Assembly: GCA_965235115.1 (NCBI GenBank)
Contig: OZ249442.1
Coordinates: 27,466,001 to 27,530,000 of the forward strand
Direction: 5' to 3'
Source of the DNA: Laetmonice hystrix
Taxonomy: Eukaryota
Length of the DNA: 64,000 bases
Positions within the stretch are counted from its first letter, which is position 1. Every line of letters begins with the position of its first letter. Positions 1-61,946 of the stretch are shown piece after piece. Position numbers and translations under genes: made by a program. Under the pieces are notes generated by a model, which saw nothing but the letters and a program-made list of their open reading frames with translations, was not told where the DNA came from and ran no database searches.

Positions 1-1546
1 GGACCAGATTCTCACAGACACTGATCGAATTGTTTACAATGTCACTTGGGGGTGCCACTTGTGTAATGTCGATCCGAGCCTAACTGCGTGCCCTCTACGG
101 GAAGGTAGACTCTCCGCCAACATCAAGGCTAAAGATCGCCAGGTAGCTCTTCCAGTTGCTGCTTCCTATATTACATACCTTCAAATCTAATTTTCCGTTC
201 CGATTTCCATTCCGTTAGCCAGAAGGAGTTCTAAATGTTGCAATGTATGATGTATGTCGTGTCCTATAGAATATGTAGGCTTACCGCTACCACATTTGTA
301 TATTTCAGGAGATGCGCGTCGTCCTGACTCAGCTCACCTTCAATTCCAAGTACTGGCTTCAGGTGAACTTAAGAGGGCAGGTCTACAGTTCGGTCTTCTT
401 CACTCCAGCCTGCCGCCAGGTGGACGCAACCTTCATGAGATGTGCCGGACCGGTGGAAACTCTGCCACCCAGGGTGAAGACCACTACCTTATGGGCAACG
501 CCTTCTAGCGGGACTTTAACATCTCTAATCACGACACCCATGTCAACGACCGATTCCGATCGTAGACCGAGTCTGTCTACAGAAAGGAAAGAACTTCCCA
601 AGGACATCAGGCCAAAACTTCACCAAGGAGGTACGTCAAGGGCATGTACATAACTTCAACTGAAAATTGTCATTGCTTGGATAGGGCACTTGTAGTAAAG
701 TCGGCCACAATGTCACAGTGTGTTAATTTCATTATGTTACAGGAGATAAATCCTGGTTGTCTGCTAACTGGCTGGTCCTACTGGTAGCGACGGCTGCCAG
801 TCTGACGACCATGGTTATCTTCACAGCCGGCCTCTATCTCTGCGGACATTTAACTCGACCCAAGGGTAAGTGACCGTTCAGTTTATATTCTCAACAGATT
901 CTATTATGTGCGAGAAGGAGTGAAACATGAGAAATATTTCTGAAATGAACCTTTTCCCTCTTATTAAAGTATTTGTCGTCTTTCCTCCACAGGATACTCG
1001 AGTGCTGGTCAGGCTAACATGACTTTCGCCAGCCTTCCGCCGTCATACAGTTCCCAAGCCAACCTTCACCAACTCCAGCACCTCCAGTTGTCTCAACGAC
1101 TCCTGGCCTACACCCCTGTACCACCCGCCTACGTCAGCGGCCCTGGCCACGCCCCCAGGCCCATGGTCATCGCCCCGCCCTACCACGGTCTGCCGCCATT
1201 GACTTGTCATCTTCAGGACATGGAGAATGACGTACAGCCCCGGCTTTCCTCCTGCCCAGACTCCCCCAAGGTACCAGTGCCTCATCAGCCCATCCCACAG
1301 ATCTCCATAGACCTGTGCTCCGACGAATCTGACGATGAGTTTCATCTGACACGAACCAGCACCCCGACAGCCACCGTCCTGCGGGTGACAGACAACCCCC
1401 TCTACCGACTTGAGCACAGTGCCCTCACAGTGCCACACCCGAGTCCAGTCCTCACGAGGAGCAGGTCGACTCAGGGCCTAGACCAGTGCTTCATCCGTGA
1501 CGACAGTGTGTCCAGTCATGAGCGTTCCCACCACAGCGACCTCTAG
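1..1546 (+). CDS. Gene A copy 0, 3' part only (FN3-like exon <1-142, exon 309-630, TM exon 743-865, tail exon 993-1546)
   Basis: GT/AG boundaries give one continuous frame: ...WDQILTDTDRIVYNVTWG...KDRQ | EMRVVLTQLTF...LHQG | GDKSWLSANWLVLLVATAASLTTMVIFTAGLYLCGHLTRPK | GYSSAGQANMTF...HSDL*. The 5' exons are outside the window. Matches the 3' half of copy 3, so it may carry the same upstream lesions. Confidence 0.88.
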
Positions 1547-2874
1547 CGTGTACCACAACGGTCTGCCGCTACAGATTGGGGCGCTAGTGGGGGTAGGGGT
1601 GCGCTGCCAGATGAGCGAAAACGTGCAATTGGTGCTATTTTATGATGCCAAATGTCAAAAATAAAATATTCAATTCGATTGTGTGTTCTGCCATTCTACG
1701 CTTAATTGATAGAACTTCAAAAGGTCTCTACCTTCTATGCGCCTTTTTATATTTCTTCTCTGCTCCCATGTCCTCAATAGTCGAATATCTAGGATTCACA
1801 TCTCAAAATGCCAGGCCTGTAATAAAAATTGACCCCGTTAAAACTCTATCCTGCAATCTTCTCATCTGAAGCCAGACGACGTGTTCATGAGGCCACGTAT
1901 AGTCTCAATCACTTCTATCGACGCCTATGCGTTAGGCCTATTAAAATAATAGGCCTGTTATCCCCAACCCGTTCCGTACTCTCGCCCACAGATCCCGTAG
2001 CATTTGAACGTCATTGGAGTTAGGAAGCTGATGTCTTGTCGTACACGTCACTGTTGTCCATATTTGTAATGAATTATTCGCTGTTTCTTTTCTTTCAAGA
2101 CATCACGTGTTTGAAATAGAATCATTAACAGTGCCGCGGCCGTCATTGTTGGCTTTACATTGCGATACACATAACTGTTTACCTCTACAAAGAGTCTTAT
2201 ATTTTGAAACTGTCTCTCATTATTTCTTCTTCAAGGTGGTAGCGTTCCCTCAACAACTATGGAGTTATACATGATGGAGAACGTGTTAAATTAAAAGTGT
2301 AGAATCGGATTGTACTTCCTAAATAGGACCAGACCAAAAGCAGTGCTTTGAATATAAGGCACCGCATGAGACCAAAGTTTTCACACCTTTTCACAAACGT
2401 TAACTACCTGCTGTTGTCTGTTCTTATGGCAACACCTGGGATAAATAATGTACATAAGGTCATAGGTCCACAGTAGCTCTTCAGCACTTGAATTGCACCT
2501 CAGACTGCCGAACAAGCTTCATAATCCAATATAGTTGGAAGAGGAACTCCGATTACATTCACAGAAAAGGTAAGACCCATTCTCACGTTTATGCCTATGT
2601 AGAGAAGAGAAATATATATATTCGTCAGGGGGAGAATAACTAACAGCTCTATCCTAAGAGCCTGTGCTCTGATAAAAAGGTTAAAGGAATTGGAAATTTA
2701 AGATAATGACATGTAAGCTTGGCCGAGAATCATATTTAGGGGCCGTATCAAATCTCAAGTATGTTTGGTCATATATACAGCATTAGGAGAGAAGGGGAAC
2801 GTTATTCGATATGTAACATTGCATTTATCTCCATTTCCAGAACGTTATCCCACTGGACAAGGTTATTAGACAAC

Positions 2875-3711
2875 ATGAATACCCTTAGAGTTTTCACACT
2901 CGTCATTATCGTTGCCTTCTTTGGTGAGTCGGTGAACTTTTTAATATATGTGATTATTGTATCTCAGTATCACTCTTTCAAATATTTCGGGGAAAGTTCT
3001 TAAGTTTGTATGCGTATCTGCTCAATTTCGCCTGTTTTGACACCTGAACAGCTTATTACTTTTACATTACGTTTTAGATTTTTCCAGATATTCAATGCCC
3101 GATGTCCTCTTCAAAGATATGGTTTAATTGTTTAAAAATACCCCATTTCTGATGTCCTGAATATCCTTTAATAGGTCAAGGTGAAAATGCCACCACATCC
3201 GGCCCAACAACGGCAGTGGTTTCCAGCACAGATCCATTGACAATGGTCACAGATTCGTCCTCTGTGACAAACGACACAGTAACGGCGATTACTGGAACGG
3301 TTGAGGCCACCACCACGGCGGAAGGAAACGCAACAGACGCCACAACAGAGGTCAGTATGATTTCTTACACATTATGATAAAATAGAGGGGAAAATATTCC
3401 CATGGAAACTTCCATGGATATACTCGTATTTCTTCCTGCCTTTAGGTGGCAAAGGTTATCTTTAGAAGTTTAAGTGCAATTTATGTCAGTCCATTTTACA
3501 CGCAATCATACGAAAGATAATTCATTTGTAAAGATTTATCGAGAAAAACACATATTTTCGGTCACGACTGCTTGTTTAAAGATTATTTTCCATTCCTTTG
3601 CATTACTGACAGACACCGGATTCGTCTCAGAACAGCGCCCACGTTCTTTCCAGCTCTGTGGTCATGGCCACATCGGCCATTGCCACATACAGCGCCCTCT
3701 TACGAATTTAA
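2875..3711 (+). CDS. Gene B copy 1: 107-aa Ser/Thr-rich glycoprotein with signal peptide and putative GPI signal (exons 2875-2923, 3175-3350, 3613-3711)
   Basis: ATG...TTTG|gtgagt (phase 1), taatag|GTCAAGGT...ACAGAG|gtcagt (phase 0), tgacag|ACACCG...TAA. Product MNTLRVFTLVIIVAFFGQGENATTSGPTTAVVSSTDPLTMVTDSSSVTNDTVTAITGTVEATTTAEGNATDATTETPDSSQNSAHVLSSSVVMATSAIATYSALLRI*. Three N-x-T sequons and hydrophobic N and C termini. Confidence 0.85.
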
Positions 3712-4209
3712 CCGTGACGTCACGACCATTCCTCATGTGATCGCGCTGAACCAATCGTCAGCAAGCTAGAGACTCAAGTTACGCTTTCTCCAGTATACAT
3801 ATTTTACGCAATATCTCCACGTGGTCAAGTGAACAAATTGATAAAAGTTTGGTGCTTAAATTGTTTAAATATTCTTATAGAAAAAAAACCAATGTATGTG
3901 TAGGTGCTAAAAGGGCAACTGAATACTACATTGACGTCCGGAGCATAACACTGGAGAAAAGCACTATTGTATGTAAAACTCGGTATTGTAAATAAAATGA
4001 AAGGTTTTTAAAAGCGAATTCATGTTTCTATTGCATAATTTCTTGTTGAACACGCACAAATAAACTTTATGTACAGCTGCCCACATTCTATCTGTCTACT
4101 AGCTGCCACTTTGGGATATTACCAAAAGTTTTTTGAGTATCTCTCCAAAAAAAAGTCCCATAGAAAATAGATGATCTTGACATACTTTCAAAAGCCCGTC
4201 TATAAAAAT

Positions 4210-4282
4210 TGACCACGATGGGACTCGAACCCACAATCTTCTGATTCGAAGTCAGACGCCTTATCCATTAGGCCACGCGGCC
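4210..4282 (-). tRNA. tRNA-Arg(UCG)
   Basis: Reverse complement GGCCGCGTGGCCTAATGGATAAGGCGTCTGACTTCGAATCAGAAGATTGTGGGTTCGAGTCCCATCGTGGTCA folds as a cloverleaf. Anticodon loop CT-TCG-AA, A and B boxes present, TTTTT Pol III terminator just downstream. Confidence 0.96.
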
Positions 4283-4519
4283 ACCCATATACAGCTTTTT
4301 CCAAATTTGGTAACACTGAGAGAAAACTCGACTAATACACGTTTAGAGTGCACGGTGAGTGTACATGTCAGTGTGAATTTCCTGTTGACACAACCCCATG
4401 GGTGATAAGTGTAATTATTCACGATCCATACCATATGGTCCCTCTTTCTGCAAAATCAAAATTTGAAGTGACAGCTAGTAGAAGTCGGGTCAAAGCGTTC
4501 TCTGTGTCTCTCCCTAGAG

Positions 4520-4840
4520 AGGGAGGGAGGGAGGGAGGGAGTGGGCGGGGTGAGACTGTTGTGGGCGGGCCCCAGCTCAAAGAGAGGGCGGGTGACAGGT
4601 AACCGTGGCCGGCTCAAATGGTCAACAGACAGGGTCATTCGGCCCACCTCGGGACTGTCCGGGCGGCACAAGTCAGTAGGCTGCCGAATAGTCTGGTGAA
4701 AGGACTTCCGTTTTCGTAACGCTATGGTGTAGGAGTGATACGGTCGTGGGGGATTCTATATTTATATTCTTACCCGTGACGTCACGGCAGTTCACTCACT
4801 TGAGCCGTCCAGACCACAACTAGCGAAGCGACCGGAAGTT
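4520..4840. promoter_or_regulatory. CpG-rich promoter-like region (unit 1; repeated in all units except unit 5) with GGGCGG boxes, a CRE palindrome and ETS sites
   Basis: Several GGGCGG boxes, 14-bp palindrome CCGTGACGTCACGG at 4774-4787, ACCGGAAGT at 4831-4839 and an ACTTCCG near 4704. Confidence 0.55.
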
Positions 4841-4866
4841 GGGCCGAGGTTTTCCGAATGCAGACA

Positions 4867-5285
4867 AGGTGTGACCGTAGTTGGTGGTGACCGGCTCGAA
4901 AGGGAAACGGGAAAGGTGTGACCTAGTTAGACTAGTCAACCCCTAGTCAGTTCTCTGCCGACTAGGGTTCGACGGGTTTAACATTTTAAATAAAGATGAC
5001 CGAATAGTGGAAAGTGTGCACGACTCTTTCAGGCTAACTTTCCAAAAACTGTTTGTTATAGCGGGCTACTATTCGGACATAGTTAATTGTTTAAAAGGTG
5101 AAACTGTTAAAAAAAAAACTCTACCCTGACGAAGCTGAAAAACAAAAAGAAGAAACCGCCCGTCCACGGGTTTAACGGTTTTACAGTGGTTGGTGGCGGT
5201 TGGCTCAAAGGGGCAGAGTGCGAGGTGTGACCGTTACGGGAAGGCAGGCGGGTCACTCCTCGCCGGGACTGCCCTATTCACACCT
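4867..5285. promoter_or_regulatory. Cluster of four perfect T-box half-sites upstream of gene A (present in each unit)
   Basis: AGGTGTGA at 4867-4874, 4914-4921 and 5223-5230; TCACACCT at 5278-5285. Confidence 0.55.
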
Positions 5286-5417
5286 ATAGCTCCCGGCCTA
5301 GGGTGGCGGCTATGATCTCGACTCGTGAAATTCCTCTAAGGCCGCATTTTTTCACACATCCACTTACAAAGAACATGTCAAAGCCTTTGAAGGGGCAGCC
5401 TCCACCGAGTGGGATGC

Positions 5418-5547
5418 TATATAAGTCAGTTCCCTGGACACAGAAATCAGAACCTTGTCGACCGTCACAGACGTCGGACATCATATCACGGATTGCATTG
5501 GACTGCTGTTAACACGGGACATACGACCAGTTTGGAAGCTTCACTAG
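5418..5547 (+). promoter_or_regulatory. Gene A TATA box (5418-5424) and probable non-coding first exon ending at 5547
   Basis: TATATAAG with an Inr-like TCAGA about 30 bp downstream, donor CTAG|gtatga, and next acceptor tttcag|ACTCG at 5680 preceding CACC-ATG at 5709. Confidence 0.6.
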
Positions 5548-5708
5548 GTATGATTCAGCTTATAATCAGCACTGCAGGGAGCGTCAAGATCTGTTTAGGT
5601 TACGACAACAATATAAAGTTATCCTTGACCATACAGTTTTTCATTGCTCTTATATTTTTTGACAATGCCATTTCTGTTTCAGACTCGAATTCAGGGGCTA
5701 CCTTCACC

Positions 5709-8700
5709 ATGAGGCTACAGGCCGTTCTCCTCCTGCTGATTACCGCCTGGCTACCGTCGACCTCAACCCTGGAGGGAGGTCTCTCCATCGAGCTGACCTC
5801 TTCACTCCAGGTGGACAGTCCGGCCCACCAATCGACTGGAGAGGGAACAGTCGGTCTAGAGATGATCGCCTCCTGTCGGGCCTCCTGTGGCGTCACAGTA
5901 AGCATTCTCCATTCATTGTACCAATAATTTTATTATGAAAATTAGGAAAACAATTTACAACAACTGTGTTTTAGATTAGAGCATTCCGTTAACAACAACC
6001 CGAATTTCACCTCAAAGACTATAAATCTGTTTTTTTTTTCTAGTTTCTTCTGTGGCCGCTAGGTGACGGGCAGTGCCTGAAGGAACCTCAATGTGTAACG
6101 GTCAGTATAAATTATATGCGTCACGATTTTGGCCACGATTCAGATACAGGCCGTAACAGCTATTTTTAGGGGTTTAAGCTTTTTTTATCCGTTCTCCAAG
6201 CCATTCATTCACTGTCTCTATCCCTTTCAGTGTTGGCGATTATGCGACCTTCTGTACACGGAAGAGCTCAAATGGAGAATGTCTTGTGACCAGGACGATT
6301 GTGTAAGTCATATTATATTTTATAACGTAAAAAACGACAGCGTGTAAATTGACCTGGAATAGGTATTCTGACTTGTACTTAAGAAATGATTCATATTCAA
6401 CATATTTTCATTCAGCTCGACGGATGTCAGACTGCCTGCAGTTTTGATTTCTCGCAGAGTCCCGATAAGCACACCTCTGTCTTTCAGTGTAGATCCTTAG
6501 GTATGCCATTTCGATTATAGTTTTTCTGTTAAGTAATTTCCGGATAAATAGTTATTTGATTATTTCCCTGGTTGTAACCTCTCCCAGTGTTGGCGACTGG
6601 CAGTTCCTTGTCGACCCCATACTGACCATTGTGGACGCCAACAAGTTACACGTCACGTTGTCTCCACCCGAATACCGCCCCGACCAGTCCCTGATTCCGA
6701 TCACCAGGTGGCAGGCCTATCGTTTACACTCTGCTGTTCAAGGATATCACGAACCCCCACTGGCGAAGGGTCACTTCGGTTAGTATGCAATGGCGTTTGT
6801 TAATCCAAATCGAAACTGTGTCGGCGAAATTTTATATAAAAGTTATTCTTGATTATCTTTTTAGAATCTAGGATGACATTTTGTATTTGCTGATTTCTAC
6901 TTTTAGACTAAGAACTTGAGAGCGATCGTGGAGGGACCACACGCAAGTCTTCCAGGCCTTCGGTTCCAGCTGCTCGCATCCTCAGAAGAAGGAACAGTTG
7001 CATATGTCTTCATTGGCTACAATCCTACCACCACACTACTACCACTGGGCCACACTACCTATACCTCTGCTACATTCAAGACATCTACAGAAACCCCGGC
7101 CTCAACAGTGAAGCATTCGATCACAATTTGGGTGTAAAATTGATGGCCTTATGTCATAGCTCATGAGCCAAGCAGACTATATTGTTGGGGTGCTTTACAA
7201 TAGATATTTCTCCATCCTACAGGGCCACACTGCAGCGATGACGTCACCAAAGGTATCAGTTGCCGTCACCGAGGATGGAAGCATTGAAGCCACCATAACG
7301 TGGGACCAGATTCTCACAGACACTGATCGAATTGTTTACAATGTCACTTGGGGGCGCCACTCGTGTAATGTCGATCCGAGCCTAACTGCGTGCCCTCTAC
7401 GGGAAGGTAGACTCTCCGCCAACATCAAGGCTAAAGATCGCCAGGTAGCTCTTCCAGTTGCTACTTCCTCTACTACATACCTTCAAATCTAATTTTCCGT
7501 TCCGATTTCCATTCCGTTAGCCAGAATGTTGCAACGTATGATGTATGTCGTGTCCTATAGAATATGTAGGCTTACCGCTACCACATTTGTATATTTCAGG
7601 AGATGCGCGTCGTCCTGACTCAGCTCACCTTCAATTCCAAGTACTGGCTTCAGGTGAACTTAAGAGGGCAGGTCTACAGTTCGGTCTTCTTCACTCCAGC
7701 CTGCCGCCAGGTGGACGCAACCTTCATGAGATGTGCCGGACCGGTGGAAACTCTGCCACCCAGGGTGAAGACTACTACCTTATGGGCAACGCCTTCTAGC
7801 GGGACTTTAACATCTCTACTCACGACACCCATGTCAACGACCGATTCCGATCGTAGACCGAGTCTGTCTACAGAAAGGAAAGAACTTCCCAAGGACATCA
7901 GGCCAAAACTTCACCAAGGGGGTACGTCAAGGGCATGTACATAACTTCAACTGAAAATTGTCATTGCTTGGATAGGGCACTTGTAGTAAAGTCGGTCACA
8001 ATGTCACAGTGTGTTAATTTCATTATGTTACAGGAGATAAATCCTGGTTGTCTGCTAACTGGCTGGTCCTACTGGTAGCGACGGCTGCCAGTCTGACGAC
8101 CATGGTTATCTTCACAGCCGGCCTCTATCTCTGCGGACGTTTAACTCGACTCAAGGGTAAGTGACCATTCACTTTAGGCTGGTCAGGCTAACATGACTTT
8201 CGCCAGCCTTCCGCCGTCATACAGTTCCCAAGCCAACCTTCACCAACTCCAGCACCTCCAGTTGTCTCAACGACTCCTGGCCTACACCCCTGTACCACCC
8301 GCCTACGTCAGCTGCCCTGGCCACGCCCCCAGGCCCATGGTCATCGCCCCGCCCTACCACGGTCTGCCGTCATTGACTTGTCACCTTCAGGACATGGAGG
8401 ATGACGTACAGCCCCGGCTTTCCTCCTGCCCAGACTCCCCCAAGGTACCAGTGCCTCATCAACCCATCCCACAGATCTCCATAGACTTGTGCTCCGACGA
8501 ATCTGACGATGAGTTTCATCTGACACGAACCAGCACCCCGACAGCCACCGTCCTGCGGGTGACAGACAACCCCCTCTACCGACTTGAGCACAGTGCCCTC
8601 ACAGTGCCACACCCGAGTCCAGTCCTCACGAGGAGTAGGTCGACCCAGGGCCTAGACCAGTGCTTCATCCGTGACGACAGTGTCTCCAGTCATGAGCGTT

Positions 8701-8720
8701 TCCACCACAGCGACCTCTAG
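5709..8720 (+). pseudogene. Gene A copy 1, disabled
   Basis: Relative to intact copies: donor GT>AT at 6465, acceptor AG>AA at 6576-6577, +T frameshift at 6692, weakened donor after the next exon, and loss of the tail-exon acceptor (net -117 bp near 8172). Confidence 0.8.
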
Positions 8721-10024
8721 CGTGTCGCGTGCCTGTAACGGTCTGCCGCTACAGATTGGGGAGCTAGTGGGGGGGGGGGGTGCGCTGCCACATGAGCGAA
8801 ATTGTGTAATATGGTGCATGCCTGGTATTTTATGATGTCAAATGTCAAAATTAAAATATTCAATTCGATTGTGTGTTCTGCCATTCTACGCTTAACTGAT
8901 AGAACTTCAAAAGGTCTCGACCTTCTATGCGCCTTTTTATATTTCTTCTCTGCTCCCATGTCCTCAATAGTCGAATATCTAGGATTCACATCTCAAAATG
9001 CCAGGCCTGTAATAAGAATTGACCCCGTTGAAACTCTATCCCACAATCTTCTTATCCGAAGTCAGACGCCGTATTCATGAGGCCCCGTATAGTCCGTTAT
9101 CCCCGTTATCCCCAACCCGTTTCGTACTGTCGCCCACAGATCCCGTAGCATTTGAACGTCATTGGAGTTAGGAAGCTGATGTCTTGTCGTACACGTCACT
9201 GTTGTCCATATTTGTAATGATTTATTTACTGTTTCTTTTGTTTCAAGACATCACGTGTTTGAAATAGAATCATTAACAGTGCCGCGGCCGTCATTGTTGG
9301 CTTTACATTGCGATACACAAAACTGTTTACCTCTACAAAGAGTCTTATATTTTGAAACTGTCTCTCATTATTTCTTCTTCAAGGTGGTAGCGTTCCCTCA
9401 ACAACTATGGAGTTATACATGATGGAGAACGTGTTAAATAAAAAGTTTAGAATCGGATTGTACTTCCTAAATAGGACCATTCCAAAAGCAGAGCTTTGAA
9501 TATAAGGCACCGCATGAGACCAAAGTTTTCACACCTTTCCACAGACGTTAACTACCTGCTGTTGTAGGCCTGCTGTTGTCTGTTCTTATGGCAACACCTG
9601 GGATACATAATGTACATAAGGTCATAGGTCCACAGTAACTGCTCAGCACTTGAATTGCACCTCAGACTGCCGAACAAGCTTCATAATCCAATATAGTTGG
9701 AAGAGGAACTCCGATTACATTCACAGAAAAGGTAAGACCCATTCTCACGTTTATGCCTATGTAGAGAAGAGAAATATATATATTATTCAGGGGGAGAATA
9801 ACTAACAGCTCTATCCTAAGAGCTTGTGCTCTATGGATAAAAAGGTTAAAGGAATTGAAAATGTATGCTTGGCCGAGAATCATATTTAGGGCCCGTATCA
9901 AATCTTAAGTATGTTTGGTCATATAAACAGAATTAGGAGAGAAGGGGAACGTTATTCGATATGTAACATTGTATTTATCTCCATTTCCAGAACGTTATCC
10001 CACTGGACAAGGTTATTAGACAAC

Positions 10025-11615
10025 ATGAATACAGTGGTCCCCCTCATAAGCGACCACCCCTGCTGTAGAGAGAAAGTGGTCGCTAGTGGCGGGTGGTCGC
10101 CTAAACGAGGGGTTGTTAAGTACGCATAGTTACCACCAGGTGGCTGCATATGAGATAACTACACACAGTTAACACTAGGTGGCGACTTCCCAGTGAGATT
10201 TGATGATGCCATTTCTGTGATGTGTCCAGCAATAGAGATTGAATCTGAATGGTGACTGATCCTGGTCAGACGGCATATGTAGAAAATCGTACTCTGCACC
10301 TGTGTATACATGAGTCTGGTTTGCCTCAGACATTTTGTTGCTTCAACCAGCCAGTTGGTGACATACCGTTTTTTCAACAGGCATGGTAGTAGGAGGGGGA
10401 GCAAAACCGTTAGCTTAAAGTGTGATGGAAGGTTGGGCCGTGTGATGGAAGTCGGGCGGGTAAGGTGAGACACGTGGCCGGCCATTGTGGGATGGAAGTG
10501 GGTGGGGGGGGGGCGGTGTTGGTGTTAGGTCAGCAGGGTGCCAGGCAGGCGGGCATGGGGAGACAAGTGTTATGACTAGCCAGGGCTGGCTGATTCTCAA
10601 AGGCTGGTCGCTGATAACGGGTGACCGGTGGAGTTGATGCAGGGATATGCCGGTCGCTGGTCGTTAGTGCCGGGTGGTCGCTTATAGGGGTGGAATTATA
10701 GTGTGAAGTGGTTAATGCAGTGGAAATGTGGTCGCTAGAGGCGGGTGGTCGCTTATAAGGGGTGGTCTTTAAGAGGGGGACCACTGTACCCTTAGAGTTT
10801 TCACACTCGTCATTATCGTTGCCTTCTTTGGTGAGTCGGTGAACATTTTAATATGTGATTATCGTATCTTAGTATCACTCTCTCAAATATTACGGGGAAA
10901 GTTCTTAAGTTTGTATGCGTATCTGCTCAATTTCGCCCGTTTTCACACCTGAACAGCTTATTACTTTTACATTACGTTTTAGATTTTTCCAGATATTCAA
11001 TGCCAGATGGCCTCTTCAAAAATATGGTTTAATTGTTTAAAAATACCCCATTTCTGATGTCCTGAATATCCTTTAATAGGTGAAGGTGAAAATGCCACCA
11101 CATCCGGCCCAACAACGGCAGTGGTTTCCAGCACAGATCCATTGACAATGGTCACAGATTCGTCCTCTGTGACAAACGACACAGTAACGGCGATTACTGG
11201 AACGGTTGAGGCCACCACCACGGCGGAAGGAAACGCAACAGACGCCACAACAGAGGTCAGTATGATTTCTTACACATTATGATAAAATACAGGGGTAAAT
11301 ATTCCCATGGAAACTTCCATGGATATACCCGTATCTCTTTCTGTCTCTAGGTGGCAAGGTTAACTTTAGAAGCTTAAGTGCAATTTATGTCAGTCCATTT
11401 TACACGCAATCATACGAAAGATAATTCATTTGTAAATATTTATCCAGTAAAACACATATTTTCGGTCACGACTGCTTGTTTAAAGATAATTTTCCATTCC
11501 TTTTCATTACTGACAGACACCGGATTCGTCTCAGAACAGCGCCCACGTCCTTTCCAGCTCTGTGGTCATGGCCATATCGGCCATTGCCACATACAGCGCC
11601 CTCTTACGAATTTAA
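10025..11615 (+). pseudogene. Gene B copy 2, interrupted after codon 2 by a MITE
   Basis: ATG AAT A is followed by the 755-bp element and the signal peptide resumes at 10787. Exons 2 and 3 are otherwise open. Confidence 0.85.
10032..10786. mobile_element. Non-autonomous Tc1/mariner-pogo-type DNA transposon (MITE), 755 bp, TA target-site duplication
   Basis: Ends CAGTGGTCCCCCTCATAAGCGACCACCCC...GGGGTGGTCTTTAAGAGGGGGACCACTG (first 14 bp a perfect inverted repeat, ~28 bp imperfect). TA at 10030-10031 and 10787-10788. Empty site GAA-TA-CCCTT in other units. Subterminal GTGGTCGC repeats. No intact transposase ORF. Confidence 0.93.
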
Positions 11616-12115
11616 CCGTGACGTCACGACCATTCCTCATGTGATCACGCTGAACCAATCGTCAGCAAGCTAGAGACTCAAGTTACGCTTTCTCCAGTAT
11701 ACATATTTTACGCAATATCTCCACGTGGACAAGTGAACAAATTGACAAAAGTTTATTGCTTAAATTGTTTAAATATTCTTATAGAAAAAAAAACCAATGT
11801 ATGTGTAGGTGCTAAAAGGGCAACTGAATACTACATTGACGTCCGGAGCATAACACTGGAGAAAAGCACTATTGTATGTAAAACTCGGTATTGTAAATAA
11901 AATGAAAGGTTTTTAAAAGCGAATTCATGTTTCTATTGCATAATTTCTTGTTGAACACGCACAAATAAACTTTATGTACAGCTGCCCACATTCTATCTGT
12001 CTACTAGCTGCCACTTTGGGATATTACCAAAAGTTTTTTTGAGTATCTCTCCAAAAAAAAGTCCCATAGAAAATAGATGATCTTGACATACTTTCAAAAG
12101 CCCGTCTATAAAAAT

Positions 12116-12188
12116 TGACCACGATGGGACTCGAACCCACAATCTTCTGATTCGAAGTCAGACGCCTTATCCATTAGGCCACGCGGCC
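12116..12188 (-). tRNA. tRNA-Arg(UCG)
   Basis: Same sequence as 4210-4282, with T5 terminator. Confidence 0.96.
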
Positions 12189-12538
12189 ACCAATATACAG
12201 CCTTTTCCAAATTTCGTAACACTGAGAGAAAACTCGATTAATACACGTTTAGAGTGCACGGTGAGTGTACATGTCAGTGTGAATTTCCTGTTGACACAAC
12301 CCCATGGGTGATAAGTGTAATTATTCACGATCCATACCATATGGTCCCTCTTTCTGCAAAATCAAAATTTGAAGTGACAGCTAGTAGAAGTCGTGTCAAA
12401 GCGTTCTCTGTGTCTGTATTTGAGGCCTTTGTCGGTATTACTCAAAGAGAGAGCGTCAGAGGCGTCACCGTGGCGGATTGGGCCAGGTCAAAGGAGGAGA
12501 GAGCGGGTGGGGTGAGGCTGTCGTGGGCGGGGTGAGGC

Positions 12539-18250: not shown

Positions 18251-19087
18251 ATGAATACCCTTAGAGTTTTTACACTCGTCATTATCGTCGCTTTCTTTGG
18301 TGAGTCGGTGAACTTTTTAATATATGTGATTATCGTATCTCAGTATCACTCTTTCAAATATTTCGGGGAAAGTTCTTAAGTTTGTATGCGTATCTGCTCA
18401 ATTTCGCCTGTTTTGACACCTGAACAGCTTATTACTTTTACATTACGTTTTAGATTTTTCCAGATATTCAATGCCCGATGTCCTCTTCAAAAATATGGTT
18501 TAATTGTTTAAAAATACCCCATTTCTGATGTCCTGAATATCCTTTAATAGGTCAAGGTGAAAATGCCACCACATCCGGCCCAACAACGGCAGTGGTTTCC
18601 AGCACAGATCCATTGACAATGGTCACAGATTCGTCCTCTGTGACAAACGACACAGTAACGGCGATTACTGGAACGGTTGAGGCCACCACCACGGCGGAAG
18701 GAAACGCAACAGACGCCACAACAGAGGTCAGTATCATTTCTTACACATTATGATAAAATAGAGGGGAAAATATTCCCATGGAAACTTCCATGGATATACT
18801 CGTATTTCTTCCTGCCTTTAGGTGGCAAAGGTTAACTTTAGAAGTTTAAGTGCAATTTATGTCAGTCCATTTTACATGCAATCATACGAAAGATAATTCA
18901 TTTGTAAAGATTTATCCAGAAAAACACATATTTTCGGTCACGACTGCTTGTTTAAAGATTATTTTCCATTCCTTTGCATTACTGACAGACACCGCGTTCG
19001 TCTCAGAACAGCGCCCACGTTCTTTCCAGCTCTGTGGTCATGGCCATATCGGCCATTGCCACATACAGCGCCCTCTTACGAATTTAA
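18251..19087 (+). CDS. Gene B copy 3 (107-aa putative GPI-anchored micro-mucin), intact
   Basis: Same three-exon structure as copy 1, splice sites intact, few substitutions. Confidence 0.83.
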
Positions 19088-19586
19088 CCGTAACGTCACG
19101 ACCATTCCTCATGTGATCGCGCTGAACCAATCGTCAGCAAGCTAGAGACTCAAGTTACGCTTTCTCCAGTATACATATTTTACGCAATATCTCCACGTGG
19201 ACAAGTGAACAAATTGACAAAAGTTTGGTGCTTAAATTGTTTAAATATTCTTATAGAAAAAAAACCAATGTATGTGTAGGTGCTAAAAGGGCAACTGAAT
19301 ACTACATTGACGTCCGGAGCATAACACTGGAGAAAAGCACTATTGTATGTAAAACTCGGTATTGTAAATAAAATGAAAGGTTTTTAAAAGCGAATTCATG
19401 TTTCTATTGCATAATTTCTTGTTGAACACGCACAAATAAACTTTATGTACAGCTGCCCACATTCTATCTGTCTACTAGCTGCCACTTTGGGATATTACCA
19501 AAAGTTTTTTTGAGTATCTCTCCAAAAAAAAGTCCCATAGAAAATAGATGATCTTGACATACTTTCAAAAGCCCGTCTATAAAAAT

Positions 19587-19659
19587 TGACCACGATGGGA
19601 CTCGAACCCACAATCTTCTGATTCGAAGTCAGACGCCTTATCCATTAGGCCACGCGGCC
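19587..19659 (-). tRNA. tRNA-Arg(UCG)
   Basis: Same cloverleaf sequence with terminator. Confidence 0.96.
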
Positions 19660-20013
19660 ACCAATATACAGCCTTTTCCAAATTTCGTAACACTGAGAGA
19701 AAACTCGAATAATACACGTTTAGAGTGCACGGTGAGTGTACATGTCAGTGTGAATTTCCTGTTGACACAACCCCATGGGTGATAAGTGTAATTATTCACG
19801 ATCCATACCATATGGTCCCTCTTTCTGCAAAATCAAAATTTGAAGTGACAGCTAGTAGAAGTCGGGTCAAAGCGTTCTCTGTGTCTGTATTTGAGGCCTT
19901 TGTCGGTATTACTCAAAGAGAGAGCGTCAGAGGCGTCACCGTGGCGGATTGGGCCAGGTCAAAGGAGGAGAGAGCGGGTGGGGTCAGGCTGTCGTGGGCG
20001 GGGTGAGGCTCCA

Positions 20014-24300: not shown

Positions 24301-24463
24301 GGTGACAGACAACCCCCTCTACCGACTTGAGCACAGTGCCCTCACAGTGCCACACCCGAGTCCAGTCCTCACGAGGAGCAGGTCGACTCAGGGCCTAGAC
24401 CAGTGCTTCATCCGTGACGACAGTGTGTCCAGTCATGAGCGTTCCCACCACAGCGACCTCTAG
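21318..24463 (+). pseudogene. Gene A copy 3, disabled
   Basis: 1-bp deletion at ~21661 (CAG TGC CGC TAG) gives an early stop in the Cys box, and the +T frameshift is present at 22284. The 3' exons are open. Confidence 0.78.
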
Positions 24464-25791
24464 CGTGTACCACAACGGTCTGCCGCTACAGATTGGGGCG
24501 CTAGTGGGGGTAGGGGTGCGCTGCCAGATGAGCGAAAACGTGCAATTGGTGCTATTTTATGATGCCAAATGTCAAAAATAAAATATTCAATTCGATTGTG
24601 TGTTCTGCCATTCTACGCTTAATTGATAGAACTTCAAAAGGTCTCTACCTTCTATGCGCCTTTTTATATTTCTTCTCTGCTCCCATGTCCTCAATAGTCG
24701 AATATCTAGGATTCACATCTCAAAATGCCAGGCCTGTAATAAAAATTGACCCCGTTAAAACTCTATCCTGCAATCTTCTCATCTGAAGCCAGACGACGTG
24801 TTCATGAGGCCACGTATAGTCTCAATCACTTCTATCGACGCCTATGCGTTAGGCCTATTAAAATAATAGGCCTGTTATCCCCAACCCGTTCCGTACTCTC
24901 GCCCACAGATCCCGTAGCATTTGAACGTCATTGGAGTTAGGAAGCTGATGTCTTGTCGTACACGTCACTGTTGTCCATATTTGTAATGAATTATTCGCTG
25001 TTTCTTTTCTTTCAAGACATCACGTGTTTGAAATAGAATCATTAACAGTGCCGCGGCCGTCATTGTTGGCTTTACATTGCGATACACATAACTGTTTACC
25101 TCTACAAAGAGTCTTATATTTTGAAACTGTCTCTCATTATTTCTTCTTCAAGGTGGTAGCGTTCCCTCAACAACTATGGAGTTATACATGATGGAGAACG
25201 TGTTAAATTAAAAGTGTAGAATCGGATTGTACTTCCTAAATAGGACCAGACCAAAAGCAGTGCTTTGAATATAAGGCACCGCATGAGACCAAAGTTTTCA
25301 CACCTTTTCACAAACGTTAACTACCTGCTGTTGTCTGTTCTTATGGCAACACCTGGGATAAATAATGTACATAAGGTCATAGGTCCACAGTAGCTCTTCA
25401 GCACTTGAATTGCACCTCAGACTGCCGAACAAGCTTCATAATCCAATATAGTTGGAAGAGGAACTCCGATTACATTCACAGAAAAGGTAAGACCCATTCT
25501 CACGTTTATGCCTATGTAGAGAAGAGAAATATATATATTCGTCAGGGGGAGAATAACTAACAGCTCTATCCTAAGAGCCTGTGCTCTGATAAAAAGGTTA
25601 AAGGAATTGGAAATTTAAGATAATGACATGTAAGCTTGGCCGAGAATCATATTTAGGGGCCGTATCAAATCTCAAGTATGTTTGGTCATATATACAGCAT
25701 TAGGAGAGAAGGGGAACGTTATTCGATATGTAACATTGCATTTATCTCCATTTCCAGAACGTTATCCCACTGGACAAGGTTATTAGACAAC

Positions 25792-26628
25792 ATGAATACC
25801 CTTAGAGTTTTCACACTCGTCATTATCGTTGCCTTCTTTGGTGAGTCGGTGAACTTTTTAATATATGTGATTATTGTATCTCAGTATCACTCTTTCAAAT
25901 ATTTCGGGGAAAGTTCTTAAGTTTGTATGCGTATCTGCTCAATTTCGCCTGTTTTGACACCTGAACAGCTTATTACTTTTACATTACGTTTTAGATTTTT
26001 CCAGATATTCAATGCCCGATGTCCTCTTCAAAGATATGGTTTAATTGTTTAAAAATACCCCATTTCTGATGTCCTGAATATCCTTTAATAGGTCAAGGTG
26101 AAAATGCCACCACATCCGGCCCAACAACGGCAGTGGTTTCCAGCACAGATCCATTGACAATGGTCACAGATTCGTCCTCTGTGACAAACGACACAGTAAC
26201 GGCGATTACTGGAACGGTTGAGGCCACCACCACGGCGGAAGGAAACGCAACAGACGCCACAACAGAGGTCAGTATGATTTCTTACACATTATGATAAAAT
26301 AGAGGGGAAAATATTCCCATGGAAACTTCCATGGATATACTCGTATTTCTTCCTGCCTTTAGGTGGCAAAGGTTATCTTTAGAAGTTTAAGTGCAATTTA
26401 TGTCAGTCCATTTTACACGCAATCATACGAAAGATAATTCATTTGTAAAGATTTATCGAGAAAAACACATATTTTCGGTCACGACTGCTTGTTTAAAGAT
26501 TATTTTCCATTCCTTTGCATTACTGACAGACACCGGATTCGTCTCAGAACAGCGCCCACGTTCTTTCCAGCTCTGTGGTCATGGCCACATCGGCCATTGC
26601 CACATACAGCGCCCTCTTACGAATTTAA
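25792..26628 (+). CDS. Gene B copy 4, intact
   Basis: Matches copy 1 at offset 22,917. Confidence 0.84.
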
Positions 26629-32942: not shown

Positions 32943-32997
32943 ATGAATACATGTACCCTTAGAGTTTTCACACTCGTCATTATCGTTGCCTTCTTTG
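32943..32997 (+). pseudogene. Gene B copy 5: signal-peptide exon only, with a 6-bp in-frame footprint; exons 2-3 deleted
   Basis: Encodes MNTCTLRVFTLVIIVAFF, then G|gtgagt. Deletion junction at 33092/33093. Confidence 0.85.
32948..32955. mobile_element. Transposon excision footprint TACATGTA
   Basis: At exactly the TA that holds the MITE in the sister copy. Reads TA + CA (element left end) + TG (element right end) + TA. Confidence 0.85.
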
Positions 32998-33949
32998 GTG
33001 AGTCGGTGAACATTTTAATATGTGATTATCGTATCTTAGTATCACTCTCTCAAATATTACGGGGAAAGTTCTTAAGTTTGTATGCGTATCTGAATGCAGA
33101 CAAGGTGTGACCGTGGTTGGTGGTGACCGGCTCGAAAGGGAAACGGGAAAGGTGTGACCTAGTTAGACTAGTCAACCCCTAGTCATTTCTCTGCCGACTA
33201 GGGTTCGACGGTTTTAACATTTTAAACAAAGATGACCGAGTAGTGGAAAGTGGGCACGACTCTTTCAGACTAACTTTCCAAAAACTGTTTGTTATAGCGG
33301 GCTACTATTCGGACATAGTTAATTGTTTAAAAGGTGAAACTGCTTAAAAAAACTCTACCCTGACGAAGCTGAAAAACAAAAAGAAGAAACCGCCCGTCCA
33401 CGGGTTTAACTACTCTAAGTTTTACAGTGGTTGGTGGCGGTTGGCTCAAAGGGGCAGAGGGCGAGGTGTGACCGTTACGGGAAGGCAGCCGGGTCACTCC
33501 TCGCCGGGACTGCCCTATTCACACCTATAGCTCCCGGCCTAGGGTGGCGGCTATGATCTCGACTCGTGAAATTCCTCTAAGGCCGCATTTTTTCACACAT
33601 CCACTTACAAAGAACATGTCAAAGCCTTTGAAGGGGCAGCCTCCACCGAGTGGGATGCTATATAAGTCAGTTCCCTGGACACAGAAATCAGAACCTTGTC
33701 GACCGTCACAGACGTCGGACATCATATCACGGATTGCATTGGACTGCTGTAAACACGGGACATACGACCAGTTTGGAAGCTTCACTAGGTATGATTCAGC
33801 TTATAATCAGCACTGCAGGGAGCGTCAAGATCTGTTTAGGTTACGACAACAATATAAAGTTATCCTTGACCATACAGTTTTTGATTGCTCTTATATTTTT
33901 TGACAATGCCATTTCTGTTTCAGACTCGAATTCAGGGGCTACCTTCACC

Positions 33950-38419: not shown

Positions 38420-39256
38420 ATGAATACCCTTAGAGTTTTCACACTCGTCATTATCGTTGCTTTCTTTGGTGAGTCGGTGAACTTTTTAATATATGTGATT
38501 ATCGTATCTCAGTATCACTCTTTCAAATATTTCGGGGAAAGTTCTTAAGTTTGTATGCGTATCTGCTCAATTTCGCCTGTTTTGACACCTGAACAGCTTT
38601 TTACTTTTACATTACGTTTTAGATTTTTCCAGATATTCAATGCCCGATGTCCTCTTCAAAAATATGGTTTAATTGTTTAAAAATACCCCATTTCTGATGT
38701 CCTGAATATCCTTTAATAGGTCAAGGTGAAAATGCCACCACATCCGGCCCAACAACGGCAGTGGTTTCCAGCACAGATCCATTGACAATGGTCACAGATT
38801 CGTCCTCTGTGACAAACGACACAGTAACGGCGATTACTGGAACGGTTGAGGCCACCACCACGGCGGAAGGAAACGCAACAGACGCCACAACAGAGGTCAG
38901 TATGATTTCTTACACATTATGATAAAATAGAGGGGAAAATATTCCCATGGAAACTTTCATGCATATACTCGTATTTCTTCCTGCCTTTAGGTGGCAAAGG
39001 TTAACTTTAGAAGTTTAAGTGCAATTTATGTCAGTCCATTTTACACGCAATCATACGAAAGATAATTCATTTGTAAACATTTATCCGGAAAAACACATAT
39101 TTTCGGTCACGACTGCTTGTTTAAAGATTATTTTCCATTCCTTTGCATTACTGACAGACACCGGATTCGTCTCAGAACAGCGCCCACGTTCTTTCCAGCT
39201 CTGTGGTCATGGCCATATCGGCCATTGCCACATACAGCGCCCTCTTACGAATTTAA
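38420..39256 (+). CDS. Gene B copy 6, intact
   Basis: Same three-exon structure, open frame. Confidence 0.83.
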
Positions 39257-45871: not shown

Positions 45872-46708
45872 ATGAATACCCTTAGAGTTTTCACACTCGT
45901 CATTATCGTTGCTTTCTTTGGTGAGTCGGTGAACTTTTTAATATATGTGATTATCGTATCTCAGTATCACTCTTTCAAATATTTCGGGGAAAGTTCTTAA
46001 GTTTGTATGCGTATCTGCTCAATTTCGCCTGTTTTGACACCTGAACAGCTTTTTACTTTTACATTACGTTTTAGATTTTTCCAGATATTCAATGCCCGAT
46101 GTCCTCTTCAAAAATATGGTTTAATTGTTTAAAAATACCCCATTTCTGATGTCCTGAATATCCTTTAATAGGTCAAGGTGAAAATGCCACCACATCCGGC
46201 CCAACAACGGCAGTGGTTTCCAGCACAGATCCATTGACAATGGTCACAGATTCGTCCTCTGTGACAAACGACACAGTAACGGCGATTACTGGAACGGTTG
46301 AGGCCACCACCACGGCGGAAGGAAACGCAACAGACGCCACAACAGAGGTCAGTATGATTTCTTACACATTATGATAAAATAGAGGGGAAAATATTCCCAT
46401 GGAAACTTTCATGCATATACTCGTATTTCTTCCTGCCTTTAGGTGGCAAAGGTTAACTTTAGAAGTTTAAGTGCAATTTATGTCAGTCCATTTTACACGC
46501 AATCATACGAAAGATAATTCATTTGTAAACATTTATCCGGAAAAACACATATTTTCGGTCACGACTGCTTGTTTAAAGATTATTTTCCATTCCTTTGCAT
46601 TACTGACAGACACCGGATTCGTCTCAGAACAGCGCCCACGTTCTTTCCAGCTCTGTGGTCATGGCCATATCGGCCATTGCCACATACAGCGCCCTCTTAC
46701 GAATTTAA
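45872..46708 (+). CDS. Gene B copy 7, intact
   Basis: Same three-exon structure, open frame. Confidence 0.83.
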
Positions 46709-53335: not shown

Positions 53336-54172
53336 ATGAATACCCTTAGAGTTTTCACACTCGTCATTATCGTTGCTTTCTTTGGTGAGTCGGTGAACTT
53401 TTTAATATATGTGATTATCGTATCTCAGTATCACTCTTTCAAATATTTCGGGGAAAGTTCTTAAGTTTGTATGCGTATCTGCTCAATTTCGCCTGTTTTG
53501 ACACCTGAACAGCTTTTTACTTTTACATTACGTTTTAGATTTTTCCAGATATTCAATGCCCGATGTCCTCTTCAAAAATATGGTTTAATTGTTTAAAAAT
53601 ACCCCATTTCTGATGTCCTGAATATCCTTTAATAGGTCAAGGTGAAAATGCCACCACATCCGGCCCAACAACGGCAGTGGTTTCCAGCACAGATCCATTG
53701 ACAATGGTCACAGATTCGTCCTCTGTGACAAACGACACAGTAACGGCGATTACTGGAACGGTTGAGGCCACCACCACGGCGGAAGGAAACGCAACAGACG
53801 CCACAACAGAGGTCAGTATGATTTCTTACACATTATGATAAAATAGAGGGGAAAATATTCCCATGGAAACTTTCATGCATATACTCGTATTTCTTCCTGC
53901 CTTTAGGTGGCAAAGGTTAACTTTAGAAGTTTAAGTGCAATTTATGTCAGTCCATTTTACACGCAATCATACGAAAGATAATTCATTTGTAAACATTTAT
54001 CCGGAAAAACACATATTTTCGGTCACGACTGCTTGTTTAAAGATTATTTTCCATTCCTTTGCATTACTGACAGACACCGGATTCGTCTCAGAACAGCGCC
54101 CACGTTCTTTCCAGCTCTGTGGTCATGGCCATATCGGCCATTGCCACATACAGCGCCCTCTTACGAATTTAA
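53336..54172 (+). CDS. Gene B copy 8, intact
   Basis: Same three-exon structure, open frame. Confidence 0.83.
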
Positions 54173-61003: not shown

Positions 61004-61946
61004 ATGAATACCCTTAGAGTTTTCACACTCGTCATTATCGTTGCTTTCTTTGGTGAGTCGGTGAACTTTTTAATATATGTGATTATCGTATCTCAGTATC
61101 ACTCTTTCAAATATTTCGGGGAAAGTTCTTAAGTTTGTATGCGTATCTGCTCAATTTCGCCTGTTTTGACACCTGAACAGCTGGATTACCCCGAGCGGGG
61201 GGCTAGCGGCACAGATTTCTCACACCTTCGGCCCTGTCTAAACGGGGGGCTAGCGGGCGGGGGGCTAGCGGGATGACACCGAACAGCTTATTACTTTTAC
61301 ATTACGTTTTAGATTTTTCCAGATATTCAATGCCCGATGTCCTCTTCAAAAATATGGTTTAATTGTTTAAATATACCCCATTTCTGACGTCCTGAATAAC
61401 GTTTAATAGGTGAAGGTGAAAATGCCACGACATCCGGCCCAACAACGGTAGTGGTTTCCAGCACAGATCCATTGACAATGGTCACAGATTCGTCCTCTGT
61501 GACAAACGACACAGTAACGGCGATTACTAGAACGGTTGAGGCCACCACCACGGCGGAAGGAAACGCAACAGACGCCACAACAGAGGTCAGTATGATTTCT
61601 TACACATTATGATAAAATAGAGGGGAAAATATTCCCATGGAAACTTCCATGGATATACTCGTATTTCTTCCTGCCTTTAGGTGACAAAAGTTAACTTTAG
61701 AAGTTTAAGTGCAATTTATGTCAGTCCATTTTACACGCAATCGTACGAAAGATAATTTATTTGTAAAGATTTATCCAGAAAAACACATATTTTCGGTCAC
61801 GACTGCTTGTTTAAAGATTATTTTCCATTCCTTTACATTACTGACAGACACCGGATTCGTCTCAGAACAGCGCCCACGTTCTTTCCAGCTCTGTGGTCAT
61901 GGCCATATCGGCCATTGCCACATACAGCGCCCTCTTACGAATTTAA
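61004..61946 (+). CDS. Gene B copy 9, intact coding exons with a ~91-bp insertion in intron 1
   Basis: Three exons open with a few substitutions (Q>E, A>V, G>R). Confidence 0.8.
61167..61288. mobile_element. ~91-bp insertion (61183-61273) flanked by a 15-16 bp direct repeat
   Basis: TGACACCTGAACAGCT [insert with three GGGGGGCTAGCGG motifs] TGACACC-GAACAGCT. Other units have a single copy of the flank. Confidence 0.7.

What the first reader, a model, noticed from the sequence alone, without database searches (positions are those of the whole stretch)
2875..3711. Hidden 107-aa CD24/CD52-like GPI-anchored glycopeptide gene missed by the ORF track
Seen: three small exons with canonical, phase-compatible splice sites. 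They encode a signal peptide, about 60 residues dominated by Thr/Ser with three N-x-T sites (NAT, NDT, NAT), and a C-terminal small-residue site (QNSA) followed by a hydrophobic tail with no cytosolic segment. The track shows only the antisense ORF of exon 2 and intron read-through ORFs. Established: this layout matches GPI-anchored micro-mucins such as vertebrate CD24 and CD52. Inference: analogy of architecture, not demonstrated homology.
Basis: partly seen in the sequence, partly recalled or inferred. Interest (0 to 1): 0.72.

Follow-up and report, generated by a model that had tools for sequence, protein, structure and literature searches.

The report
Amplified worm GPI-like micro-mucin gene
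The three small exons form a real-looking, unannotated worm gene for a 107-residue secreted, threonine-rich peptide with a lipid-anchor-type tail. It is repeated about 25 times in tandem, has no relatives outside this genome, and has no RNA or biochemical proof yet.

Summary
Exons 2875-2923, 3175-3350 and 3613-3711 join through GT..AG introns in compatible phases into a 107-aa ORF. It has an N-terminal signal-peptide-like segment and an acidic core that is 43% Ser/Thr, with no Cys and three N-x-T sites. It ends in Q-N-S-A, a 6-residue spacer and a 17-residue hydrophobic end.

The ORF is not a chance product.
- It sits in a ~7.5-kb tandem unit, with 8 copies in the window and about 25 on this chromosome.
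- Exons vary less than intron interiors (25/324 against 91/461 sites, p = 2e-6).
- Four diverged paralogs modelled in full at three other loci keep the 49-nt first exon, the splice sites and the frame, and all their indels are multiples of three.
- dN/dS is 0.35-0.6.
- The Q-N-[GS]-A motif plus a 23-25-residue tail is invariant across the family.

Pfam, a 5.8-billion-protein word search and an exhaustive profile search found no relatives. It therefore resembles CD24/CD52 in layout only and is not a member of either family.

GPI anchoring and glycosylation rest on rule-based inspection. No trained predictor was available.

The scan has already described a similar family of tiny GPI-mucin genes elsewhere in this genome (s1-337659).

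The parts
2812..2838 (+). Conserved upstream motif (TGTAACATTGCATTWATCTCYATTTCC), 37-63 nt before the ATG. It is a candidate core promoter or initiator. A splice acceptor for an upstream non-coding exon is not excluded.
   Evidence: Aligned upstream regions of the candidate and paralogs L027, L028 and L031.
2875..2923 (+). Exon 1: start codon and signal-peptide-like segment (MNT...FFG), 49 nt, ending in phase 1.
   Evidence: The 49-nt length and the GTGAGT donor are kept in all paralogs. Paralogs have in-frame stops just upstream, so this ATG is the conserved start.
2924..3174 (+). Intron 1 (GT..AG).
   Evidence: It is more variable than the exons.
3175..3350 (+). Exon 2: predicted signal-peptide cleavage site (G-Q-G|E) and the acidic Thr/Ser-rich core with three N-x-T sequons.
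   Evidence: The sense frame is the only one open in all five family members.
3351..3612 (+). Intron 2 (GT..AG).
3613..3711 (+). Exon 3: end of the core, the Q-N-S-A candidate omega site, a 6-residue spacer, a 17-residue hydrophobic tail and the stop codon.
3712..3758 (+). Conserved element directly after the stop codon. It contains TGACGTCA (3715-3722) and CCAAT (3751-3755). Its function is unknown.
   Evidence: Nearly identical in paralogs L027 and L028 despite ~72% overall identity, and partly kept in L031.
3991..3996 (+). First AATAAA downstream of the stop, a candidate poly(A) signal giving a 3' UTR of about 280 nt. A second lies at 4059-4064.
   Evidence: Read from the sequence. Not tested.
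18251..19087 (+). Intact tandem copy.
25792..26628 (+). Intact tandem copy, 100% identical to the candidate.
38420..39256 (+). Intact tandem copy.
45872..46708 (+). Intact tandem copy.
53336..54172 (+). Intact tandem copy.
61004..61946 (+). Tandem copy with an insertion of about 100 bp in intron 1. The ORF and splice sites are intact, with three amino-acid changes.
10025..11615 (+). Copy whose exon 1 is interrupted just after the start codon by an insertion of about 755 bp (10033-10786). Probably disabled.
32954..33092 (+). Remnant holding exon 1 only. A deletion of about 1.8-2 kb removed exons 2 and 3 and the tRNA.

Best explanation
This is one copy of a lineage-specific (annelid-like worm) three-exon gene for a 107-aa precursor. 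Inferred mechanism: the N-terminal segment (one basic residue, then an 11-residue hydrophobic core) takes the chain into the ER. It is then cut after G-Q-G, or after G-G-C in paralogs. The remaining acidic, Cys-free core of about 63 residues is 43% Ser/Thr, probably disordered, and probably N- and O-glycosylated. At the invariant Q-N-[GS]-A motif, GPI transamidase would cleave after Asn82 (omega site, with Ala at omega+2). That removes the 25-residue propeptide (spacer plus hydrophobic tail) and attaches a GPI lipid. The product would be a small, negatively charged surface micro-mucin. The gene belongs to a small family with at least five other loci. It was caught in a 7.5-kb unit, together with an orphan membrane-protein gene and a tRNA-Arg gene, that has been amplified to about 25 tandem copies. 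This suggests selection for dosage or a very recent expansion. Shown here: gene structure, conservation, purifying selection, family, amplification and absence of outside homologs. Inferred: secretion, cleavage sites, GPI anchoring, glycosylation, expression and biological role.
For: The exon model is exact. Seven of the eight copies in the window keep the full ORF, and all eight keep all four splice sites. Of the 25 array copies, 21 are intact. Exons vary less than intron interiors across the array: 25/324 against 91/461 variable sites, Fisher p = 2e-6. Four diverged paralogs modelled in full at C7 29.09 Mb (two) and C1 14.97 Mb (two) keep the 49-nt exon 1, GT..AG introns and intron phases. 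Their exon length differences are -9, -12, -3 and -18 nt, all multiples of 3. A sixth locus, C1 8.63 Mb, keeps exons 1 and 2 and an exon 3 match but was not modelled in full. dN/dS is 0.35-0.60, and codon-position variability runs 3 > 1 > 2 (43, 36, 22). Exons are more alike than introns between paralogs. Only the sense frame of exon 2 is open in all five members. In-frame stops lie upstream of the ATG in paralogs. Across the five members, Q-N-[GS]-A is invariant and is followed by a 23-25-residue tail. The best 15-residue hydropathy of that tail is 1.7-2.6. The predicted mature part has no basic residue, 6-9 acidic residues and 35-46% Ser+Thr. This layout fits the general GPI-precursor scheme of an N-terminal signal, an omega site, a spacer and a C-terminal hydrophobic signal (PMC6726743). 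Paralog loci have no copy of the neighbouring gene in their available flanks, so the gene is an autonomous unit.
Against: There is no RNA evidence. No trained signal-peptide, GPI or O-glycosylation predictor was run. The tail of this particular copy is only moderately hydrophobic (mean 1.69, T94 variant) and has Arg at the second-last position. dN/dS of about 0.5 indicates only moderate constraint. The sequon at N49 is not conserved in paralogs. A conserved TTTCCAG upstream of the ATG could be a splice acceptor, so the 5' end of the transcript is uncertain.
Confidence: 0.6

Rival explanations
1. The gene is real, but the C-terminal hydrophobic segment is not exchanged for GPI. It stays as a single membrane span with a two-residue cytosolic end (type I micro-mucin).
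For: From the spacer to the end there are about 20 mostly uncharged residues, and Arg lies at the second-last position in the candidate and in L027/L028. This could act as a stop-transfer signal.
Against: The segment is rich in Ser/Thr/Ala and only moderately hydrophobic. An invariant small-residue motif, N-[GS]-A, sits 6-8 residues before it in all five members. L031 and L034 have no basic residue at the end. This is the usual pattern for GPI signals rather than for stable membrane anchors (general knowledge; PMC6726743).
Confidence: 0.15
2. The ORF is conserved but the array copies are silent or decaying duplicates. The window copy would be a non-expressed relic of a recent segmental amplification.
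For: No RNA evidence was obtained. No matching protein exists in collections that include assemblies of public runs. Four of the 25 copies are already broken: one by an insertion, one by truncation and two by loss of a donor site.
Against: Exon-specific reduction of variation within the array (p = 2e-6). Twenty-one intact ORFs with all splice sites. Conservation of the upstream motif.
Confidence: 0.12
3. The protein is a secreted soluble Thr-rich peptide, for example a mucus component. The hydrophobic C-terminus would be a removed or functional propeptide and not a GPI signal.
For: The earlier notes describe several other amplified genes for secreted orphan peptides in this genome (I did not check them).
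Against: A hydrophobic stretch that runs to the very C-terminus after a small-residue motif has no known role in soluble secreted peptides. It is the most consistently kept architectural feature of the family.
Confidence: 0.08
4. The coding signal belongs to the other strand or to a larger gene (the upstream orphan gene), and the three-exon model is an artefact.
For: The antisense frame of exon 2 is open in the window. The reading frame is open upstream of the ATG in this copy.
Against: Each antisense frame has a stop in at least one paralog, while the sense frame is open in all. The upstream frame is closed in all paralogs. Paralog loci lack the upstream gene in their available flanks. GT..AG sites on the + strand are kept everywhere.
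Confidence: 0.03

Closest known systems
Vertebrate CD24 (small GPI-anchored mucin-like glycopeptide)
   Same: A short precursor with an N-terminal signal peptide, a Ser/Thr-rich N- and O-glycosylatable disordered core, and a C-terminal GPI attachment signal with no cytosolic part. CD24 has an 80-aa precursor and a 31-aa mature peptide (PMC9604962).
   Different: No sequence similarity: Pfam gave no match and the profile search gave none. The predicted mature peptide is about twice as long (~63 aa) and strongly acidic. The gene has three exons and lies in a ~25-copy tandem array.
Vertebrate CD52
   Same: A tiny GPI-anchored glycopeptide, by architecture only (my own knowledge, not tested here).
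   Different: The mature CD52 peptide is about 12 residues with a single N-glycan (my own knowledge). No sequence similarity was found.
Trypanosoma cruzi small mucins (TcMUC/TcSMUG), from my own knowledge
   Same: Large multi-copy families of short Thr-rich, GPI-anchored surface glycopeptides with a conserved signal peptide and GPI signal and a variable core. Multi-copy dosage is also shared.
   Different: An unrelated organism with no sequence homology detected. The worm core is not made of Thr-run repeats and varies little among copies.
Family of tiny GPI-mucin-like genes already reported by this scan in the same genome (s1-337659)
   Same: Three exons, a Thr-rich secreted peptide with a GPI-like tail, purifying selection, no outside relatives and no RNA data.
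   Different: That report concerns another piece of the genome. I could not show that its genes share the MNT..FFG / QN[GS]A signature, because the lookup by sequence was blank.

Membership tests
CD24 family (homology) | Detectable sequence similarity to CD24 (Pfam CD24 model or database relatives). | tested here: not met
   Pfam scan of the exon 2 and exon 3 peptides gave 0 families at E <= 1. The profile search of 1.84 billion representatives gave only one low-complexity hit, E = 2e-5.
CD52 family (homology) | Detectable sequence similarity to CD52. | tested here: not met
   Same searches.
GPI-anchored protein precursors (class, not a homology family) | N-terminal hydrophobic signal peptide. 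| tested here: met
   Rule-based only. Arg5 is followed by an 11-residue hydrophobic core (best 10-residue hydropathy 3.2), with small residues at -3 and -1 (G-Q-G, or G-G-C in paralogs). This is kept in all five members. No trained predictor was run.
GPI-anchored protein precursors (class, not a homology family) | Small residues at omega and omega+2, a short polar spacer, then a hydrophobic stretch that ends the protein. | tested here: met
   Q-N-[GS]-A is invariant in five members. The spacer is 6-8 residues, the hydrophobic end 15-17 residues, and the whole propeptide 23-25 residues.
GPI-anchored protein precursors (class, not a homology family) | A positive call by a trained predictor (NetGPI, PredGPI, big-PI). 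| not testable with these tools
   No such predictor is available here, and the spliced protein has no reference to hand to other tools.
GPI-anchored protein precursors (class, not a homology family) | Biochemical proof (PI-PLC release, Triton X-114 partitioning, mass spectrometry of the C-terminus). | not testable with these tools
   This is an experiment.
Mucin-like glycoproteins | High Ser/Thr(/Pro) content in an unstructured region. | tested here: met
   Ser+Thr make up 35-46% of the predicted mature part, with no Cys in the array copies.
Mucin-like glycoproteins | Tandem PTS repeats. | tested here: not met
   The 63-residue core has no internal repeat on inspection of the sequence. No repeat tool was run on it. 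It is mucin-like by composition only.
Mucin-like glycoproteins | Dense O-glycosylation. | not testable with these tools
   This needs NetOGlyc or an experiment.
In-genome MNT..FFG / QN[GS]A micro-mucin family | A 49-nt exon 1 (MNT..FF) with a GTGAGT donor, a Thr-rich exon 2 in phase 1, and an exon 3 with QN[GS]A plus a hydrophobic end. | tested here: met
   (27 exon 1 matches, 0 in the control).

The most novel reading that the evidence does not exclude
An annelid has independently evolved a CD24-like or trypanosome-mucin-like surface coat. An orphan GPI-anchored acidic micro-mucin would be supplied in bulk by a recently amplified array of about 25 copies. It is co-amplified with an orphan membrane-protein gene that may be its partner. 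This would be a dosage-driven, fast-evolving glycocalyx or mucus-interface system, for example for anti-adhesion, self-marking or handling of microbes.
Probability: 0.2. Interest if true: 0.55.

Novelty: new variant of a known kind. Interest (0 to 1): 0.4.

Why it matters
If the gene is expressed and GPI-anchored, it would be a lineage-specific family of very small surface glycopeptides in an annelid. It would have arisen independently of vertebrate CD24/CD52, and ORF-based or homology-based annotation cannot see it. The ~25-copy tandem array, together with an orphan membrane-protein gene and a tRNA gene, is a clean example of recent gene amplification. It could be used to study dosage selection and the birth and decay of tandem gene copies. 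Without RNA or biochemical data it remains a well-supported gene prediction and not a demonstrated system. The scan has already reported a similar family in this genome, which lowers its marginal novelty.

Tried and rejected
RNA evidence:
- The look-up of sequencing runs gave only three runs of unknown kind from one study. They hold 77-80% of the words, introns included, so they are probably DNA.
- Loci that carry flanking copies of that tRNA were used only in local scripts.

Homology:
- The search for homologous proteins with the 74-aa open frame around exon 2 found nothing.
- Pfam on the exon peptides and on six ORF pieces of the neighbouring gene found nothing.
- An exhaustive profile search with alignment A1 gave one low-complexity match only.

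- The full 107-aa spliced protein has no reference, so I did not hand it to the look-up of encoding contigs, the structure or atlas tools, or the predictors.

Other checks that led nowhere:
- Findings lookup by sequence was blank.
- Literature searches for annelid GPI mucins or invertebrate CD24/CD52 gave nothing relevant.
- Rejected readings: an antisense gene, an N-terminal extension from the ATG at 2761, and dependence on the upstream gene.

Full report
**1. The observation**

- An ATG at 2875 opens a 49-nt exon that ends before GTGAGT.
- After the acceptor TAATAG, a 176-nt exon (3175-3350) ends before GTCAGT.
- After the acceptor TGACAG, a 99-nt exon (3613-3711) ends in TAA.
- The intron phases (1 and 0) fit, and the joined 324 nt encode 107 residues.
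- Thr (23), Ser (14), Ala (13) and Val (12) dominate, and there is no Cys, Lys or Trp.
- N-x-T sequons lie at residues 21, 49 and 68.
- The ORF list shows only the antisense ORF of exon 2 (3176-3343) and ORFs that read through into introns. A plain ORF track does miss the gene.

**2.

The window is a tandem array with a period of about 7.5 kb.
- It holds eight copies of the candidate region. Each is followed about 500 bp downstream by a tRNA-Arg(TCG) gene on the minus strand.
- Each copy is preceded by a second, multi-exon orphan gene on the + strand. Its last exon is the 175-aa ORF at 1019-1546, 8193-8720 and so on.
- There is higher-order structure: 1-10033 equals 22918-32951 at 99.96% identity.
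- The window is C7:27466001-27530000 of a 627-Mb, 35-contig genome. Earlier notes of this scan call it an annelid worm; I did not check that.
- On that chromosome about 25 copies lie between 27.26 and 27.54 Mb. Six are inverted at the low-coordinate end.

**3. Is it a gene or a chance ORF?**

Within the array:
- Seven of the eight window copies keep the full ORF, and all eight keep all four splice sites. The eighth copy has an insertion of about 755 bp just after the start codon.
- Of the 25 array copies, 21 are intact. One is 5'-truncated, one carries the insertion, and two have lost the exon 2 donor.
- Variable sites are rarer in exons (25 of 324) than in intron interiors (91 of 461), Fisher p = 2e-6. 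The window copies alone give p = 0.005.

Outside the array there are diverged paralogs:
- two at C7 29.09 Mb (about 72% DNA identity);
- two arranged head to head at C1 14.97 Mb;
- one at C1 8.63 Mb, not modelled in full.

A pattern for exon 1 plus its donor hits 27 places in the genome and none in the reversed control.

The four paralogs modelled in full keep the 49-nt exon 1, GT..AG introns and the intron phases. Their exon length differences (-9, -12, -3 and -18 nt) are all multiples of three.

Further measures point the same way.
- Pairwise dN/dS is 0.35-0.60.
- Variability by codon position is 36, 22 and 43.
- Exons are more alike than introns.
- The sense frame of exon 2 is the only frame open in all five members.
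- In the paralogs the frame upstream of the ATG is closed by stops within 10-25 codons. The in-frame ATG at 2761 in this copy is therefore not the conserved start.
- The paralog loci show no trace of the neighbouring gene in their available flanks, so the small gene is an autonomous unit.

I take the gene model as well supported (about 0.85), although no RNA evidence could be obtained.

**4. What the product looks like**

An alignment of the five family members shows four parts.
- **(a) Signal-peptide-like start.** MNT, then a hydrophobic core ending in FF[GA]. Small residues stand at -3 and -1 of a likely cleavage site (G-Q-G or G-E-G in the array, G-G-C in three paralogs) just before a conserved E-N-A-T-T.
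- **(b) Core.** It has 56-63 residues with 35-46% Ser+Thr, 6-9 acidic residues and no basic ones. Conserved blocks are GPTTAVVSS.DP, TGTVEATT and N[AT]TDATT. The first and third sequons are kept among the closer paralogs. The middle one is not.
- **(c) Candidate omega site.** An invariant Q-N-[GS]-A.
- **(d) Tail.** A 23-25-residue stretch made of a 6-8-residue polar spacer and a 15-17-residue hydrophobic end that terminates the protein.

This is the general layout of a GPI-anchored precursor (PMC6726743). Asn is a plausible omega residue and Ala a plausible omega+2.

The copy in the finding carries Thr at position 94, where most copies have Ile. Its tail is therefore the least hydrophobic of the set (1.69 against 2.3-2.6).

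These are rule-based readings. No trained predictor was available, and the spliced protein has no reference that I could pass to other tools.

**5. Relatives**

- The word-indexed search of 5.8 billion proteins found nothing.
- Pfam found nothing.
- An exhaustive HMMER profile search of 1.84 billion representatives, built from the four exon 2 peptides (A1), found only one repetitive low-complexity hit.
- Literature searches found no annelid GPI micro-mucins and no invertebrate CD24/CD52.

The gene is not a member of the CD24 or CD52 families. It shares their architecture, with a longer and acidic core. CD24 has an 80-aa precursor and a 31-aa mature peptide (PMC9604962).

The scan has already reported a similar family of tiny three-exon GPI-mucin-like genes on another piece of this genome (s1-337659). 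I could not establish whether it is the same family.

**6. Mechanism and rivals**

Best reading (0.6): a secreted, glycosylated, GPI-anchored acidic micro-mucin of the cell surface. It is supplied from an amplified array.

Rivals:
- the tail stays as a membrane span (0.15);
- the array copies are silent relics (0.12);
- the product is a soluble secreted peptide (0.08);
- the model sits on the wrong strand or belongs to a larger gene (0.03).

**7. Limits**

Expression therefore remains untested. Anchoring and glycosylation are also untested.

**8. Verdict**

- The finding is a solid prediction of an orphan gene with a notable tandem amplification. Its interest is moderate (0.4).

Noticed in passing
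window 4209-4283, 12115-12189, 19586-19660, 27126-27200, 39756-39830, 47208-47282, 54672-54746, 62445-62519 (minus strand): There is one tRNA-Arg(TCG) gene per 7.5-kb unit, eight in the window. A degenerate tRNA-like stretch (76-83% alike) lies in most units, for example at 1822-1897 and 9012-9087. The reads tool flagged 4234-4287, so I did not study these further.
   Followed up: partly
window 1-10033 and 22918-32951: A higher-order repeat: these two 10-kb blocks are 99.96% identical, while neighbouring 7.5-kb units differ by 2-6%. This suggests a very recent duplication of about 23 kb, or an assembly effect.
   Followed up: no
window 10033-10786: An insertion of about 755 bp lies just after the start codon of copy 2, with a 3-bp overlap in the alignment at the junction (possibly a target-site duplication). 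Another first-stage note calls it a MITE.
   Followed up: partly
window 33089-33092 junction: One unit jumps from the equivalent of position 3020 to the equivalent of 4853. This deletion of about 1.8-2 kb removes exons 2 and 3 and the tRNA, and brings exon 1 next to the following orphan gene.
   Followed up: no
window 3712-3758: A block directly after the stop codon holds a palindromic TGACGTCA, a CATGTG/CACGTG box and CCAAT. It is better conserved between 72%-identical paralogs than the coding exons are. It looks like a promoter or enhancer, and its target is unknown.
   Followed up: partly
L027 and L028 (C7 29.09 Mb), intron 1; L035 (C1 8.625-8.627 Mb), intron 2: Two paralog lineages carry tandem duplications of an exon end together with its donor site. 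L027/L028 have about 49-bp units, 4-8 copies, after exon 1. C1 8.63 Mb has about 54-bp units, roughly 36 copies, after exon 2. Each unit repeats a GT donor, and the second kind also contains TACTAAC.
   Followed up: partly
window about 5700-8720 (repeated in each unit): The co-amplified upstream gene has a signal-peptide-like start (MRLQAVLLLL...) and a 175-aa Pro/Ser-rich last exon. Its ORF pieces gave no Pfam match at E <= 1, so it is an orphan too.
   Followed up: partly
G000:C7 27.264-27.305 Mb against 27.307-27.538 Mb: The array is split into an inverted block of six copies and a forward block. The start codons of the two innermost copies are about 2.2 kb apart, head to head. The two C1 14.97 Mb paralogs are also head to head, about 1.2 kb apart.
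   Followed up: no
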